Part shown: in pieces, positions 14,226 through 18,292 of the stretch
Layout: the number at the start of each line of letters is the position of its first letter
Numbering within the stretch: the first letter of the stretch is position 1
Virus record (IMG/VR): IMGVR_UViG_3300050132_000038
Coordinates: 62,001 to 126,000 of that record
Length of the DNA: 64,000 nucleotides
Direction: 5' to 3' (one strand)
Made by a program: the position numbers and the translations under genes
Notes under the pieces: generated by a model
The model's database searches: none
What the model saw: the letters and a program-made list of their open reading frames with translations, nothing else
What the model was told of the DNA's origin: nothing

Positions 14226-15740
14226 TTAGACCACTGTCAGGGTTTCATTATCCTTGGCGTGTTTGAAGCTTCGATCCTTCTCGATTGCTGCCCGTGTGTC
14301 AGCCAGGTCTAACAGGATTTTCGACTTCGGCTTCTTTTGCCACGCCTGTAATTGTTTCAATACGCCTTGCTGCTCCTTCATCTTGGTATTTAGCGCCTGC
14401 TCTTCCAAACGTGTTAACTGGTCGAGCCGCAAAGCCAAGATTTGCTTCACTTGTTCGACAGTGAGTTTCAGCTTTTTCACAATGTACGCCGTAGGATCTG
14501 GTGTCTTCCGCACCGCGTAGATAACCGTATCCAACTTGTCCACTGCGAAGATCAACAGCTTGGAGTAGGCAATCGCTGCCTCCTGCTTATGCACACGATA
14601 CGCCAAACTCTTGAGTTCCAACTCGATACGCATCTTCAGCCATTGCACAATCAGCTGTGGAACAGACAAGGCCAAGAACTTGGTCTCGAACGTTGTAATG
14701 CCATCGACTGTTTGTGCTTCTCGCTTCGTTACGTTGATCTTGAACGAGCATGACTGACGAGTTGCCAGTTGCACCTTCTCCACATACTTATCGAACTGGG
14801 TAAAGTTGTATGCAGCTTTGCATTCGATGGTGAGGGTGGCTGAACCTTTAGAGTTATAGCACCGTTGGGTTTCAGGCATAGCCCTAACCTTATCAATGAA
14901 GCGTTGCAGGTTGGTACCTGGAGGCCAGTCAGAGATCACCATCTTCTTATGATCCCGGTCTACCTCAATGTCAGATTCAAACTTCACGTTCGTTTCCGAC
15001 TCCCTGAACATCTTGATCCACGCTTCCTTGTTCTCCTTGGTATTGAGAAGATGCCCGCCCCACTTGTGGGCGAACTTCAACGCTTTGGCGAAGTCTAAAG
15101 ATTGAAGCTTCTCACCTTTCAACAAACGTTCGAGTACACCGATCACTGATTCGGGAGTGAACGTTGGTAGTGAGGTAGTGATACCCACACCGATACCCTC
15201 ACCTCCGTTGATAATGACATTAGGCAACTGTGCAGGTAATGTTACTGGCTCAATATCCTTGTCGTCGTAGTTAGGCACAAATGTTGTAACATCTTTGTGG
15301 ATGTAGTCCGACAGGAAGAACGATTGACCGTACGCAGAGAGGCGCATATTCGTATAACGCATCGCAGCTGCGTCGTCGATCATGTTACCCCAGTTCCCCT
15401 TACCGTGAATGGCAGGCGTGGGGTGATTGACGATTGTAGTGATTGCACCTGCGATGGAACTATCTCCGTGAGGGTGCCACCTACCCATAACCAACCCCAC
15501 TACACGCGCTGTCTTCTCAAACGTGGAGAAGGACTCCTTAGACGCTCCCCACAGGATACGCCTCTGCACCGGCTTGAGACCGTCGTACAAGTCAGGCACT
15601 GACCGATCAAGATTAACTGCTATGGCGTACGTTGTCATGTTACGCTTACCGAAGTCGCGCAGTGCCTCGTCCTTCACATGCTTATCAGCAGCAGGTACCA
15701 GACCACCAGTAGGTGCCTTAGTTTTCTTCTTCGTTACCAT
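14226..15740 (-). CDS. gyrA: Type IIA topoisomerase subunit A (GyrA/ParC-like, no CTD)
   Basis: DGLKPVQRRILW, KTARVVG, HPHGDSSI, AAAMRYT (catalytic Tyr); only 504 aa. Confidence 0.92.
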   Translation of the reverse strand: MVTKKKTKAPTGGLVPAADKHVKDEALRDFGKRNMTTYAIAVNLDRSVPDLYDGLKPVQRRILWGASKESFSTFEKTARVVGLVMGRWHPHGDSSIAGAITTIVNHPTPAIHGKGNWGNMIDDAAAMRYTNMRLSAYGQSFFLSDYIHKDVTTFVPNYDDKDIEPVTLPAQLPNVIINGGEGIGVGITTSLPTFTPESVIGVLERLLKGEKLQSLDFAKALKFAHKWGGHLLNTKENKEAWIKMFRESETNVKFESDIEVDRDHKKMVISDWPPGTNLQRFIDKVRAMPETQRCYNSKGSATLTIECKAAYNFTQFDKYVEKVQLATRQSCSFKINVTKREAQTVDGITTFETKFLALSVPQLIVQWLKMRIELELKSLAYRVHKQEAAIAYSKLLIFAVDKLDTVIYAVRKTPDPTAYIVKKLKLTVEQVKQILALRLDQLTRLEEQALNTKMKEQQGVLKQLQAWQKKPKSKILLDLADTRAAIEKDRSFKHAKDNETLTVV

Positions 15741-15748
15741 TTTAGTCC

Positions 15749-18292
15749 TTACGCTGCTTTACGTTTAATGAGGGCCTTCTTAACGGCTACCACTTTCTTT
15801 ACGGGAGCTTCCTCGGCGTCATTGCCCGTAGAACTGGAAGGTAAGCCTAGCATGTCTCTTCGGTACTGAACATTATCGTCCATCAACTTTACAAAATCCA
15901 CCTTATCATCGGATTCGATAGCTTTGATACGTATCACCTTACGAGTCTCTGGATTCATTGCGAGGATCCGCATGAGATTTGCGTCTAGCTCACCCCACCC
16001 TTTAATATGATTTACAAGGACCGTGGAGGGGGCTTTGAACTTCAGCAGTTTCTTCTGCGTCTCGGATACAGTGTCTCCTGTAATCAACTGCCCTTTGTGA
16101 ACTGCATAGAACTCAGGGGCATTTGACACGTACACCATACCCTTCTTGAATAGTTCGGGTAGGTAACGGTAGAATAGGGTTAGCAGCAGACTATTGATGT
16201 GACAGTTACTGGAGACGATACCAGAAGGTAGAATGAAGTTATGATAACGCGGGACCGTCAAACAGTAAACAGGTACAGGCTCCTTCAACTTCTGAATCCG
16301 CATCTTCGACACAGGGGCAAACCCAAGGCCGGTCAGCTTGTCACAGCTCGAGGGATTGCGTGACTTGTTGGACGAGGGAAGGAATACCCGATCGCCAATC
16401 TTCAAGTCCTCTGATGCAACATACACCAGATTATCGAAGTTTGTCGGCTGAGTACGACGACCATACATTGCATTGGTGACCAAACACATCCACTTATGCG
16501 ACATATCCACTTTGTACTTGGTACCTCCGATCTCCAAGGCAACGAGCGTGTCCACATTCTTAACTAGCTCTGCTGTTGCAGGTGCCCATGTCTCTTTAGC
16601 GCCAGTCCACACCGGAACTTCGAAGATGGGAGCTGCTACAGAGTACGGGCCACCGCGGTCTACGGCAGTAAGTTCGTAAATCTCCCGCTCATACTCTGAA
16701 CCATTTATACGAACTCGAATTTTGGTGTCACGCACAAACGGGCCGTCTGGGTCCGGGTCGGCCAAGCAGATGATCTTACCGATAGTCAGCTTCGAGTAGG
16801 GATCACTTGCTTTCACGTCGTAGCCAATTGCTGCCAGAATGTTAATCACTTCCTCTGACTCTAATGCCTTGCCCTTATTATCCTTTAAGCTGTTGAGAAT
16901 TTTCCCGCGAAGTGGAAGCACCCCTTGATATGGAAAACGAGCCTCCTTGGTCGTGCCCCCGGCACTGTCTCCCTCTACTAAGAACAGCTCCCGGTCCTGC
17001 GGTTTAGTCCGACTGTCGAATGCGGCATACTTTGCGGGTAGCCCATTGCGCTTTACCGCGTTGAGCTTGCCTGCTGCCTTCTTCGACATTGTGAACTTGG
17101 TCTTCAACTCATTCATCTGCGTAGCGCGGTCTGCAATGCGCTGAGCCAATGCCTTGTTCTCTTTGAAGAACTTCGTTGTCGCAAGCGTGAGGGCCGTTTC
17201 AAAGTCCTTACCCACTCGATCGTCAGTCAGCTTTGCCTTATCCTGGGAACTGAACTGTGCCTTGTGCAACTTTGCATTCACGAGGCCCACCAAACCTTCC
17301 TTCAAGTCGGCCTCACGGAATACCGGAACCTGCTTGCCGTCCACCTTCTTCGTTTTGATGAATGGCTTCAAGCCTGCATACAGAGCACCCGTTACTGAAT
17401 CAACGTGCTTACCGCCCTGCCCGTTGTTCAAACCATTAGTGAAGCCTCGCACATCACAGCCATCATAGTTTGAGAATGCGACAACCACATCAGCAAGGCT
17501 TGAGCTGTTCTCAAACATCTGACGCTCGCCCTCAGTCTTTAGCTTCAGCATACGCTGGGCTACGTACTCCGTCGGACCCTTCTTCGACAGAAATTGTTTT
17601 GCACCCTTTGCGCTACTTATAGTGATGGAGAACCCAGGGTTGAGGTATGACATAATCTCAGCCCACTCTACCGCCATTGATGCAGGAAATGACTTGGCTG
17701 AGAAGATGGTGGAGTCAGGCTTGAAATGGATCACCGTACCAGATGTAGGGCGCTTACCATTCCACAGCTTAGGTGCTGTCTTAGCCGCAGCAACAGGGGA
17801 CGTAAGTTTACCTTTCTTGAAACCAATCGTGTGCCATTTGCCTTTGAAGAAGGTACACGCGTCGAAGAAGTCAGCCGTGGCATTCGTGCCCTTCGCGCCT
17901 ACGCCGTGCGTGCCCACTGAAATCTTGTAAGCGTCATCACGATATTTGCCTGACGTATGCAATTCCCCGAACACTGCTTGCATAGTGGACATGGTGAAAA
18001 TCTTTTCACCGCTTCCCGTAGTTGCTTCCCACTTCTTAATGCCCTGCGGAATGCCGTGTCCATTGTCCGTCACCCAGTACGAACCGTCTGAGTCAACATG
18101 GAGATGCACCGAGTCGTTACGCCCAGCCAAGTGCTCGTCCAGTCCATTGTCGAGGAGCTCTCGGGCGCAAAGCCATACCCCGGAGGCATCCACACTGCCA
18201 AGATACATAGAGGGGTTTCGGCGGATTGATTCCGGGAATCGTAATGTCTCGATGTGACTGCTATCGTACTCTGCTACCTTCTTGGTTGCCAT
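15749..18292 (-). CDS. gyrB: Type IIA topoisomerase subunit B (GyrB/ParE-like) with intein
   Basis: ELLDNGLDE, DNGHGIP, GTHGVG, LFLVEGDSAGG, PLRGKILN, ADPDPDG...HINSLLLTLF. Confidence 0.95.
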   Translation of the reverse strand: MATKKVAEYDSSHIETLRFPESIRRNPSMYLGSVDASGVWLCARELLDNGLDEHLAGRNDSVHLHVDSDGSYWVTDNGHGIPQGIKKWEATTGSGEKIFTMSTMQAVFGELHTSGKYRDDAYKISVGTHGVGAKGTNATADFFDACTFFKGKWHTIGFKKGKLTSPVAAAKTAPKLWNGKRPTSGTVIHFKPDSTIFSAKSFPASMAVEWAEIMSYLNPGFSITISSAKGAKQFLSKKGPTEYVAQRMLKLKTEGERQMFENSSSLADVVVAFSNYDGCDVRGFTNGLNNGQGGKHVDSVTGALYAGLKPFIKTKKVDGKQVPVFREADLKEGLVGLVNAKLHKAQFSSQDKAKLTDDRVGKDFETALTLATTKFFKENKALAQRIADRATQMNELKTKFTMSKKAAGKLNAVKRNGLPAKYAAFDSRTKPQDRELFLVEGDSAGGTTKEARFPYQGVLPLRGKILNSLKDNKGKALESEEVINILAAIGYDVKASDPYSKLTIGKIICLADPDPDGPFVRDTKIRVRINGSEYEREIYELTAVDRGGPYSVAAPIFEVPVWTGAKETWAPATAELVKNVDTLVALEIGGTKYKVDMSHKWMCLVTNAMYGRRTQPTNFDNLVYVASEDLKIGDRVFLPSSNKSRNPSSCDKLTGLGFAPVSKMRIQKLKEPVPVYCLTVPRYHNFILPSGIVSSNCHINSLLLTLFYRYLPELFKKGMVYVSNAPEFYAVHKGQLITGDTVSETQKKLLKFKAPSTVLVNHIKGWGELDANLMRILAMNPETRKVIRIKAIESDDKVDFVKLMDDNVQYRRDMLGLPSSSTGNDAEEAPVKKVVAVKKALIKRKAA
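16205..16741 (-). mobile_element. 179-aa class 3 mini-intein in GyrB
   Basis: Insert PFVRDTKI...SHKW...VYCLTV...HNFILPSGIVSSN followed by +1 Cys; removing it restores DPDG-CHINSLLL. Confidence 0.88.

What the first reader, a model, noticed from the sequence alone, without database searches (positions are those of the whole stretch)
16205..16741. Class 3 mini-intein starting with Pro in the GyrB TOPRIM motif
Seen: a 179-aa insert between DPDG and CHINSLLL. Residue 1 is Pro (non-nucleophile), block B is SHKW (His then Trp), block F is VYCLTV (Cys in place of Asp), and the end is VSSN|C. There is no endonuclease domain. Established: class 3 inteins lack the N-terminal nucleophile and use a W-C-T triad with the block F Cys as first nucleophile. 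Here the block G Thr is Ser and the penultimate His is Ser, a doubly atypical end. It interrupts the metal-binding DxD region, so enzyme activity depends on splicing, and the Cys could make splicing redox-sensitive (inference).
Basis: partly seen in the sequence, partly recalled or inferred. Interest (0 to 1): 0.7.

Follow-up and report, generated by a model that had tools for sequence, protein, structure and literature searches.

The report
Class-3-type mini-intein in phage gyrase B
A 179-residue self-splicing protein insert (a mini-intein with no N-terminal nucleophile and a block F cysteine) interrupts the metal-binding TOPRIM motif of a jumbo phage's GyrB-like topoisomerase; it belongs to a family of more than 100 unrecognised members whose closest relatives are ordinary class 1 inteins in the same gene.

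Summary
Window 16205-16741 (minus strand) encodes a 179-aa in-frame insert between DPDPDG and CHINSLLL of an 847-aa GyrB-like topoisomerase subunit. The contig is a complete 218.9-kb phage related to phiRSL1.

The insert is a HINT-fold mini-intein: AlphaFold pLDDT 92, and Z 14-17 against about 50 solved inteins. It has Pro1, His82 and Trp84 in block B, Cys160 at block F position 4, and ends Ser-Ser-Asn before Cys+1.

I found 113 complete inteins at this site. His B:10, Cys F:4 and the terminal Asn are invariant. The +1 residue is Cys in 111 and position 1 is Pro in 107. Intein-less orthologues carry ten different residues at +1. Larger relatives carry an HNH endonuclease.

The best reading is an active intein that splices by the class 3 route, with Cys160 attacking first. 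This is not tested biochemically.

It is not a canonical W-C-T class 3 member. G:5 is Ser, the penultimate His is missing, +1 is Cys, and half the family has Phe at B:12. Profile comparison puts it next to class 1 inteins in the same gene (E 1.5e-20) rather than canonical class 3 inteins (E 9e-6). This suggests a separate origin of the class 3 design. The redox idea is untested.

The parts
15749..18292 (-). Host gene: GyrB/ParE-like type IIA topoisomerase subunit (GHKL ATPase + TOPRIM). The precursor is 847 aa and the predicted spliced product is 668 aa.
   Evidence: ORF. Pfam hits to DNA_gyraseB, Toprim, DNA_gyraseB_C and HATPase_c. Orthologues in phiRSL1 and BcepSaruman are annotated as type IIA topoisomerase.
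16742..18292 (-). N-extein coding part (residues 1-517), ending in the TOPRIM motif DPDPDG.
   Evidence: Alignment to the solved GyrB TOPRIM domain, DADVDG|AHI.
16742..16759 (-). TOPRIM DxDxDG motif (DPDPDG). Its Gly is the -1 residue of the intein.
   Evidence: Invariant D, D, D and G in 84 relatives. The role of DxDxxG in Mg(II) binding is stated in the PMC2241903 abstract.
16205..16741 (-). The mini-intein, 179 aa, Pro1 to Asn179, HINT fold, no endonuclease domain.
16712..16741 (-). Block A, PFVRDTKIRV. Pro1 (16739-16741) is not a nucleophile.
   Evidence: Position 1 is Pro in 107 and Cys in 6 of 113 family members.
16484..16525 (-). Block B, GTKYKVDMSHKWMC. His82 (B:10) is at 16496-16498 and Trp84 (B:12) at 16490-16492.
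   Evidence: His is present in 113/113. B:12 is Trp 55, Phe 54, Leu 4. In register with canonical class 3 block B.
16229..16273 (-). Block F, PVYCLTVPRYHNFIL. Cys160 (F:4, proposed first nucleophile) is at 16262-16264 and the block F His167 at 16241-16243.
   Evidence: Cys is present in 113/113. It aligns with Asp F:4 of the Pho RadA intein and with the F:4 Cys of canonical class 3 inteins.
16202..16225 (-). Block G and the C-terminal junction, SGIVSSN|C: Ser177 (G:5), Ser178 (G:6, in place of His), Asn179 (G:7), Cys+1 (16202-16204).
   Evidence: Asn is present in 113/113. The +1 residue is Cys 111, Ser 2. G:5 is Ser 102, Cys 7, Thr 4. G:6 is His in only 7.
15749..16204 (-). C-extein coding part (residues 697-847 plus the stop codon), starting CHINSLLL.
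14226..15740 (-). Partner gene directly downstream: the GyrA/ParC-like DNA-cleavage subunit (504 aa). It needs the spliced TOPRIM subunit.
   Evidence: Pfam DNA_topoisoIV, E 8.8e-74.

Best explanation
The insert is an active, endonuclease-less intein that removes itself from the topoisomerase precursor by the class 3 route.

Proposed steps, all inferred:
1. The 847-aa precursor folds its HINT domain.
2. Cys160 (block F position 4), activated by His82 (B:10) with Ser177 (G:5) standing in for the class 3 Thr, attacks the Gly517-Pro518 peptide bond. This forms a branched thioester at Cys160.
3. The N-extein is passed to Cys+1 (Cys697).
4. Asn179 cyclises, probably helped by the block F His167 because the penultimate His is missing, and releases the 20-kDa intein.
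5. An S-to-N shift makes the native Gly-Cys bond. This restores the TOPRIM sequence DPDPDG-CHINSLLL in a 668-aa subunit.

What is shown: the sequence anatomy, the fold, the exact insertion site, the family-wide conservation pattern, the existence of empty alleles, and the existence of endonuclease-bearing relatives.

What is inferred: that splicing happens, and the order of nucleophiles.
For: Fold:
- AF2 pLDDT 92.2, pTM 0.88.
- All top Foldseek and VIA-align matches are inteins, including class 3 structures 6zgq, 6riy and 6bs8 at Z 14.0-14.7.

Family:
- 113 complete inserts occupy the same site in jumbo-phage GyrB-like proteins, down to about 29% identity.
- His B:10, Cys F:4 and Asn G:7 are invariant. 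Cys+1 is in 111 and Pro1 in 107.

Constraint at +1 comes from the intein:
- 59 intein-less orthologues have H, W, S, R, A, C, Y, L, K or G at that position.
- Two of the three empty alleles that keep Cys sit next to occupied ones in the extein tree.

Mobility:
- Relatives of 418-455 aa carry an HNH_3 endonuclease and pass the Pfam Intein_splicing cut-off.
- Presence or absence changes at least 9 times on the extein tree.

Position 1 is dispensable as a nucleophile:
- Pro and Cys interchange inside one clade while Cys F:4 never changes.

Precedents from the literature:
- The Pro1 class 3 prototype splices efficiently and needs its F:4 Cys (PMC2807308).
- In Bvi IcmO, which also has Cys+1, Cys+1 cannot replace Cys F:4 (PMC5222942).
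- AceL NrdHF splices fast without Trp B:12 and without both assisting His residues (PMC7891396).
- A block F His can take over from a missing penultimate His (PMC5050341).

GC content of the insert equals its surroundings, so the insert is old and maintained.
Against: - No biochemical evidence exists for any member of this family.
- The strict class 3 W-C-T signature is not met (Ser at G:5). The +1 residue is Cys rather than Ser/Thr, and the penultimate His is absent.
- With Cys+1 and no N-terminal nucleophile, a class 2 route cannot be excluded from sequence alone.
- The family is closer in sequence to class 1 inteins than to proven class 3 inteins, so transferring the mechanism from the canonical clade is an analogy.
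- I could not read the model's coordinates. The placement of Cys160 between the two junctions rests on alignment to F:4, not on measured distances.
Confidence: 0.7

Rival explanations
1. The intein is active but uses the class 2 route. Cys+1 attacks the Gly-Pro junction directly, as in the Ala1 KlbA inteins. Cys160 would be a structural or assisting residue rather than the first nucleophile.
For: Both class 2 prerequisites are present: no nucleophile at position 1, and Cys at +1 in 111 of 113 members. Nearly all proven class 3 inteins have Ser/Thr at +1 (PMC5222942).
Against: Cys at F:4 is invariant in 113 copies, whereas the related class 1 inteins have Asp or Gly there. [quoted passage not shown] The His-x-aromatic block B and the Ser/Thr at G:5 fit the Cys-His-Thr triad described for MchDnaB1 (PMC7664689).
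Confidence: 0.1
2. The insert is a dead intein relic that stays in the mature protein, or the gene is a pseudogene and the phage relies on host topoisomerases.
For: Pfam scores this copy below threshold. The penultimate His and the G:5 Thr are missing. Decayed, free-standing relatives without the catalytic His, Cys or Asn do exist (P0102 and P0114).
Against: The frame is open, and all catalytic positions are kept across 113 copies at 29-68% identity. The +1 Cys is held only where the intein is present. A 179-aa domain placed one residue after the DxDxDG metal site would break the TOPRIM fold. The decayed relatives show what loss of constraint looks like, and this copy does not look like that.
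Confidence: 0.05
3. Splicing is conditional. The two catalytic cysteines (Cys160 and Cys+1) form a reversible disulfide under oxidising conditions, so the intein works as a redox gate on phage topoisomerase activity. This adds to the best explanation and does not exclude it.
For: The class 3 Msm DnaBi1 intein is reversibly blocked by a disulfide to its catalytic F:4 Cys (PMC6195587). Here two catalytic cysteines lie in one active site, and they are the only cysteines conserved in the family.
Against: There is no direct evidence. The partner cysteine of the Msm case has no conserved counterpart here: Cys86 is in 22/84 members and Cys133 in 11/84. A fixed mini-intein that lost its endonuclease needs no regulatory role to persist.
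Confidence: 0.2

Closest known systems
Class 1 mini-intein at the EGDSAGG|T TOPRIM site of related jumbo-phage GyrB-like proteins (for example P0002:449-605)
   Same: This is the closest relative by sequence. hhalign gives probability 99.3%, E 1.5e-20, over 151 columns, end to end with both junctions in register. BLASTP gives E 2e-11. It shares the block A xFVGxTK(I/V)R, the block B DHxW, and the block F PVPVYx.TVPKYHNF. It occupies the same host gene family.
   Different: It has Cys1, Asp at F:4, and ends Val-His-Asn|Thr, which is the standard class 1 set. It sits about 70 residues upstream. In the tree the 113 site-3 inteins separate from the class 1 inteins (SH-aLRT 97).
Mycobacteriophage Bethlehem 'DnaB' intein (MP-Be, class 3 prototype; encoded in gp11, now annotated terminase large subunit)
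   Same: It shares Pro1, His B:10, Trp B:12, Cys F:4 and the terminal Asn. No N-terminal nucleophile is needed, and it is of phage origin (PMC2807308; sequence read).
   Different: It ends Thr-His-Asn|Thr. It is 341 aa, and the PMC5050341 supplement legend lists LAGLIDADG endonuclease blocks for Bethlehem. The family profile scores only 1-3 bits against it. Against a nine-member canonical class 3 profile, hhalign gives only E 9e-6 over 90 columns.
Burkholderia vietnamiensis IcmO intein (class 3 mini-intein with Cys+1)
   Same: It is a mini-intein with no N-terminal nucleophile, a Cys at F:4 and a Cys at +1. It was shown to need Cys F:4 first and Cys+1 second (PMC5222942).
   Different: It is described as carrying the class 3 sequence signatures. 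It is a single case on a bacterial plasmid gene, whereas here Cys+1 is the rule in more than 100 phage copies. I did not compare the sequences.
AceL NrdHF split class 3 intein (PDB 6ZGQ)
   Same: It deviates from W-C-T (Met at B:12) and lacks the penultimate His, yet splices fast by the class 3 route (PMC7891396). The structural match to the model is Z 14.7.
   Different: It is naturally split, keeps Thr at G:5, and also lacks the block F His, which this intein keeps (His167).
Pyrococcus horikoshii RadA mini-intein (class 1; PDB 4E2T/4E2U/2LQM)
   Same: It is the best solved-structure match: profile E 1.7e-11, Foldseek E 1.5e-9, and Z 16.9 with 154 aligned residues. Its block F/[23 protein letters not shown] matches VYCLTVPRYHNFILPSGIVSSN.
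   Different: It has Asp at F:4 and a penultimate His, and it is archaeal.
Rare WCS / FCS / WCC entries in the 2020 census of 1702 class 3 inteins (Hoffmann et al., Table S1)
   Same: The same triplet patterns as this family were counted (WCS 3, FCS 1, WCC 1). phiRSL1's own copy is F-C-S, so a few members may already have been in nr.
   Different: They are listed only as counts of deviants. No host protein, site, family or kinship is described, and I cannot check that they are the same proteins.

Membership tests
Intein (HINT-fold protein-splicing element) | Hedgehog/intein (HINT) fold | tested here: met
   AF2 pLDDT 92.2. Foldseek probability 1.00 to inteins. VIA-align Z 14-17 to about 50 inteins.
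Intein (HINT-fold protein-splicing element) | In-frame insert at a conserved site of a host protein, with intein-less alleles that define exact boundaries | tested here: met
   59 orthologues read DPDPDG-x-HIN with no insert. The site is in register with solved GyrB TOPRIM domains.
Intein (HINT-fold protein-splicing element) | Block B His (B:10), C-terminal Asn (G:7) and a Cys/Ser/Thr at +1 | tested here: met
   His82, Asn179 and Cys+1 are present. His and Asn are in 113/113; +1 is Cys 111, Ser 2.
Intein (HINT-fold protein-splicing element) | Penultimate His (G:6) | tested here: not met
   The residue is Ser178. In the family it is S/A/G/K, and His in only 7 of 113. This is a common but not obligatory feature. 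Phage inteins often lack it, and a block F His can compensate (PMC5050341). His167 is present here.
Intein (HINT-fold protein-splicing element) | Demonstrated excision and extein ligation | not testable with these tools
   This needs a splicing reporter or proteomics.
Class 3 intein, signature of Tori et al. 2010 | No Cys/Ser/Thr nucleophile at position 1 | tested here: met
   Pro1, codon CCG at 16739-41. This is the same residue as in the prototype (PMC2807308).
Class 3 intein, signature of Tori et al. 2010 | Cys at block F position 4 | tested here: met
   Cys160, invariant in 113 copies. It aligns to the F:4 Cys of nine canonical class 3 inteins.
Class 3 intein, signature of Tori et al. 2010 | Trp at block B position 12 | tested here: met
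   Trp84 is present in this copy. Across the family the position is Trp 55, Phe 54, Leu 4, with at least 14 switches on the tree.
Class 3 intein, signature of Tori et al. 2010 | Thr at block G position 5 | tested here: not met
   The residue is Ser177. In the family it is Ser 102, Cys 7, Thr 4. This is a conservative change, and mutating this Thr can have minimal effect in tested class 3 inteins (PMC5222942).
Class 3 intein, signature of Tori et al. 2010 | Ser or Thr at +1 | tested here: not met
   The residue is Cys+1, in 111 of 113 members. Bvi IcmO is the one precedent (PMC5222942).
Class 3 intein, operational definition of Hoffmann et al. 2020 (no Cys at the N-end, Cys at C2:4) | Both criteria | tested here: met
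   Pro1 and Cys160 are present. That census counts WCS and FCS variants as class 3.
Class 3 intein, mechanism | Obligate block F branched intermediate formed before the block G branch | not testable with these tools
   This needs Cys160, Cys+1 and Asn179 mutants and thiol-lability assays.
Canonical class 3 clade (W-C-T, T-H-N end, mostly LAGLIDADG endonuclease) | Specific sequence kinship with proven class 3 inteins | tested here: not met
   No class 3 PDB entry appears at E<=10 with the family profile, while about 20 class 1 inteins do. The profile scores 1-3 bits against MP-Be. hhalign gives E 9e-6 to canonical class 3 and 1.5e-20 to class 1 kin. The endonuclease in relatives is HNH_3, whereas 82.5% of class 3 inteins carry LAGLIDADG (PMC7891396).
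Class 1 intein | Cys/Ser/Thr at position 1 as first nucleophile | tested here: not met
   Position 1 is Pro. Six family members have Cys1 but are nested inside Pro1 lineages and keep Cys F:4.
Class 2 intein (KlbA type) | No N-terminal nucleophile, with Cys+1 attacking the N-terminal junction directly | tested here: inconclusive
   The sequence prerequisites are present. The reaction itself cannot be tested here. The invariant F:4 Cys and the Bvi IcmO precedent argue against it.

The most novel reading that the evidence does not exclude
The DxDxDG-site inteins of jumbo-phage GyrB-like proteins may be a second, independently evolved lineage of class-3-mechanism inteins. Their features would be an aromatic-Cys-Ser triad, obligate Cys+1, no penultimate His, and an HNH rather than a LAGLIDADG endonuclease. 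The lineage would have arisen once from class 1 inteins living in the same gene. It would contain natural Pro1-to-Cys1 reversions and repeated Trp/Phe swaps. This would provide a natural class 1 / class 3 pair about 28% identical, on which the class switch can be retraced.
Probability: 0.45. Interest if true: 0.62.

Novelty: new variant of a known kind. Interest (0 to 1): 0.5.

Why it matters
Class 3 inteins are the least understood splicing class. Grafting W-C-T onto the class 1 gp41-1 intein failed. From this, Beyer et al. argued that a class 1 to class 3 transition is evolutionarily improbable and proposed convergence of the fold (PMC7664689).

This family offers three things:
- a large natural set in which the block F Cys and Cys+1 are fixed while the other signature residues (Trp, Thr, penultimate His, even position 1) vary;
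- close class 1 relatives in the same host gene;
- both mini and endonuclease-bearing forms.

That makes two questions directly testable: which residues are really needed for the class 3 route, and how the route can evolve.

There are practical points too. This is a small class-3-type intein that accepts Gly at -1 and Cys at +1, which is a candidate protein-engineering tool. For phage annotation, GyrB-like genes of phiRSL1, BcepSauron/Saruman and many metagenomic jumbo phages contain up to three unannotated inteins, so their predicted protein sizes and domain calls are wrong.

If the mechanism is not class 3, or the family's separate origin is not upheld, this is simply one more mini-intein in an essential replication gene.

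Tried and rejected
- Megablast of the gene against GenBank phages found nothing. Protein-level search was needed.
- Single-sequence phmmer against the PDB gave only weak block F/G hits. The family profile was needed.
- hhalign of the family profile against the full MP-Be intein gave nothing. That test is unfair because of MP-Be's endonuclease domain. I repeated it with split pieces and with nine canonical class 3 inteins whose endonuclease columns I cut by hand. That cut is my own judgement, and the profile is shallow.
- A scan of one genome per prokaryote species found no cellular relative. The patterns used were specific to this family, so distant cellular kin are not excluded.
- A looser motif for the C-terminal junction only produced false internal matches. 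Apart from four sequences in which no C-extein motif was found (P0066, P0103, P0123, P0132) and the truncated ORF P0080, no insert lacks Asn plus Cys/Ser at the junction.
- RNA-level removal was considered and rejected. The frame is open, the fold is HINT, and there is no Rfam hit.
- Flanking direct or inverted repeats: none of note.
- Recent horizontal arrival of this copy: the GC profile is flat.
- The context of the free-standing relic P0102 shows no neighbouring GyrB pieces, so it is not a split gyrB.
- Tori and Perler 2011 (class 3 phylogeny) is not held. What I say about a proposed single phage origin rests on its title and on citations in PMC5222942 and PMC5050341.
- Model coordinates are not exposed, so no active-site distances were measured.
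- Sequencing-read tools were not used, because protein splicing leaves no trace in DNA or RNA.
Full report
**1. What is there**

The window lies at 62001-126000 of a 218,861-bp viral contig with direct terminal repeats. The contig is rated complete and has 48% G+C.

An ORF on the minus strand, 15749..18292, encodes 847 aa with the GHKL ATPase, GyrB, TOPRIM and GyrB C-terminal domains. It is followed at once by a 504-aa GyrA/ParC-like gene at 14226..15740. This is the two-subunit phage type IIA topoisomerase that Iyer et al. describe for jumbo phages (PMC7824862).

Residues 518-696, encoded by window 16205-16741 on the minus strand, form a 179-aa stop-free insert between DPDPDG and CHINSLLL.

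The plus strand carries no ORF of 80 aa or more here. There is no Rfam family in the region and no flanking repeat of note.

**2. It is an intein**

Pfam sees only blocks F and G, and below threshold (25.6 against 35.8 bits). Stronger tests settle the question:
- A profile of 84 relatives matches the Pho RadA mini-intein at E 1.7e-11, and about 20 further inteins.
- An AlphaFold model built on that alignment has pLDDT 92.2 and pTM 0.88.
- Foldseek returns only inteins and HINT domains at the top, best E 1.5e-9.
- VIA-align gives Z 14-17 to about 50 inteins of all classes. This includes the class 3 structures 6zgq, 6riy and 6bs8 at Z 14.0-14.7.

The fold therefore says 'intein' but does not tell the class.

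**3. The site**

Intein-less orthologues read DPDPDG-x-HIN. One of them aligns in register with solved GyrB and ParE TOPRIM domains, D-A-D-V-D-G|A-H-I.

The -1 residue is therefore the conserved Gly of the TOPRIM DxDxxG metal-binding motif (PMC2241903 abstract). A 179-aa domain at that point should prevent TOPRIM function until it is removed. That last step is inference.

The spliced length, 668 aa, fits the 620-690 aa of the empty alleles.

**4. The family**

A search restricted to the insert region found 97 proteins. With the other searches I extracted 113 complete inserts at this site. Named members are Ralstonia phage phiRSL1 and Burkholderia phages BcepSauron and BcepSaruman. IMG/VR loci are mostly on contigs of 215-262 kb. 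No cellular copy was found, and this genome has only this one intein.

Key positions across the 113 inserts:

| Position | Residues |
|---|---|
| His B:10 | 113/113 |
| Cys F:4 | 113/113 |
| Asn G:7 | 113/113 |
| +1 | Cys 111, Ser 2 |
| Position 1 | Pro 107, Cys 6 |
| B:12 | Trp 55, Phe 54, Leu 4 |
| G:5 | Ser 102, Cys 7, Thr 4 |
| G:6 | Ser, Ala, Gly or Lys; His in only 7 |
| Block F His | 81 His, 32 Gly |

My extraction required Asn (or Gln/Asp) plus Cys/Ser/Thr before HI, so the last two junction positions are partly fixed by construction. A looser search found no exception: it flagged only four sequences with no C-extein motif and internal false matches, one of them in the truncated ORF P0080.

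Relatives of 418-455 aa carry an HNH_3 endonuclease inside the intein and pass the Pfam Intein_splicing cut-off. The window's copy is therefore the endonuclease-less form of a once-mobile element. Its G+C content does not differ from its surroundings.

**5. Evidence that it splices**

This evidence is indirect.
- The catalytic positions are kept across copies that are only 29-68% identical.
- In 59 empty alleles the +1 position is H, W, S, R, A, C, Y, L, K or G, while occupied alleles have Cys. The constraint therefore comes from the intein, not from the enzyme.
- On the extein tree, empty alleles are nested among occupied ones, with at least 9 changes. Two of the three empty alleles that still have Cys (P0136, P0138) sit next to occupied ones, as expected soon after a precise loss.
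- Decayed relatives exist as free-standing ORFs that have lost the His, Cys or Asn (P0102, P0114). They show what relaxed selection looks like.

**6. Which mechanism**

Class 3 inteins use the F:4 Cys as the first nucleophile and do not need a nucleophile at position 1. The prototype starts with Pro1 (PMC2807308).

The window's intein has Pro1, His B:10, Trp B:12 and Cys F:4. The family profile aligns these in register with nine canonical class 3 inteins that I collected from phage records.

Inside the family, Pro1 and Cys1 interchange within one clade while Cys F:4 never changes. When the tree is rooted on class 1 relatives, the Cys1 forms are derived. This fits a position 1 that is not the nucleophile.

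Deviations from the class signature:

| Deviation | Precedent |
|---|---|
| Ser for Thr at G:5 | Conservative change; the Thr can be mutated with little effect (PMC5222942) |
| Cys at +1 | Bvi IcmO, where Cys+1 could not replace Cys F:4 (PMC5222942) |
| No penultimate His | Tolerated in AceL NrdHF and in many phage inteins; a block F His can compensate (PMC7891396, PMC5050341); His167 is present here |
| Phe for Trp at B:12 in half the family | AceL NrdHF works with Met there (PMC7891396) |

By the operational definition of Hoffmann et al. (no Cys at the N-end, Cys at C2:4) this is class 3. Their census of 1702 class 3 inteins lists WCS 3, FCS 1 and WCC 1 as rare deviants, without description.

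I put 0.7 on 'active, class 3 route'. I put 0.1 on a class 2 route through Cys+1 and 0.05 on a dead relic.

**7. Kinship**

This was the unexpected part. The family profile finds no class 3 entry of the PDB at E<=10 and scores 1-3 bits against the class 3 prototype.

The related phage GyrB-like proteins carry inteins at two further sites:
- after SVG|THGVG in the ATPase domain;
- after EGDSAGG|T in TOPRIM.

Both of these are ordinary class 1 inteins, with Cys1, Gly or Asp at F:4, and +1 Thr or Ser. They share the block F motif PVPVY-x. The long ATPase-site forms carry the same HNH_3 endonuclease.

Profile comparisons:

| Comparison | Probability | E-value | Columns |
|---|---|---|---|
| This family vs EGDSAGG-site class 1 inteins | 99.3% | 1.5e-20 | 151, end to end |
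| This family vs canonical class 3 set | 83% | 9e-6 | 90 |

The comparison against the class 1 inteins was also run against P0002 alone.

In a joint tree, the 113 F:4-Cys inteins form one side of a branch against the 10 class 1 inteins (SH-aLRT 97).

The simplest reading is that the class-3-type design arose once in this lineage from class 1 kin, apart from the canonical W-C-T / T-H-N / LAGLIDADG clade.

Caveats:
- The canonical profile has nine members, and I removed the endonuclease columns by hand.
- All inteins are ultimately homologous.
- The direction of the switch is inferred from an outgroup of only ten sequences.
- The mechanism is unproven.

**8. Redox idea**

Msm DnaBi1 shows that a class 3 catalytic Cys can be locked by a disulfide (PMC6195587). 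Here only Cys160 and Cys+1 are conserved; Cys86 and Cys133 are lineage-specific. Any family-wide redox switch would therefore have to be a Cys160-Cys+1 disulfide. This is possible but untested.

**9. Verdict**

It is wrong to treat Pro1 as the oddity, and it misses Cys+1 and the class 1 kinship.

I found no paper describing inteins in these phage topoisomerases. I rate it a new variant of a known kind, with interest 0.5.

Noticed in passing
window 17911/17912 (after residue 127, SVG|THGVG) and 16954/16955 (after residue 446, EGDSAGG|T): Related phage GyrB-like genes carry class 1 inteins at these two further sites. The first group has Cys1, Gly or Asp at F:4, and ends ..VSN|T; some members are 494 aa with an HNH_3 endonuclease. 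The second group has Cys1, Asp at F:4, and ends VHN|T. Both sites are empty in this window. Some relatives hold two inteins in one gene (for example P0002, P0082, P0110).
   Followed up: partly
L004:4001-4543 (P0102); also P0114: These are free-standing ORFs of 177-180 aa in phage contigs that match the whole intein (38% identity for P0102). They have lost the block B His. P0114 has also lost the block F Cys, and neither ends in a terminal Asn. The neighbours of P0102 are not GyrB pieces. They may be decayed or domesticated HINT domains.
   Followed up: partly
P0100: This 2094-aa metagenomic protein has no Pfam family. It matches intein residues 95-123, the region around LVYVxAxDLKxGD, in 24 separate stretches. 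It is an unexplained repeat protein.
   Followed up: no
P0066 (693 aa, cluster of 80 member sequences), sister of the BcepSaruman protein in the extein tree: This allele's reading frame departs from the family just before block F and ends soon after. It could be a frameshift, a pseudogene or an assembly error inside the intein.
   Followed up: no
L002:7680-8702 (Mycobacterium phage Bethlehem, AY500153): The class 3 prototype known as the 'MP-Be DnaB intein' lies in gp11. The RefSeq record annotates that gene as terminase large subunit. The gene annotated as DnaB-like helicase (gp62) has no intein.
   Followed up: yes
L022 (Salmonella phage vB_SalM_SA002, MN445183 217804-219012): A canonical class 3 intein region is annotated there as two separate CDS ('RAD2/SF2 helicase 1' and '2'). 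The gene call appears to have been split at the intein.
   Followed up: no
window 14226-15740 (-) and 15749-18292 (-): The GyrB-like and GyrA-like genes are 8 bases apart on the same strand. The GyrA-like subunit is short (504 aa) and matches only the DNA_topoisoIV core domain in Pfam.
   Followed up: no
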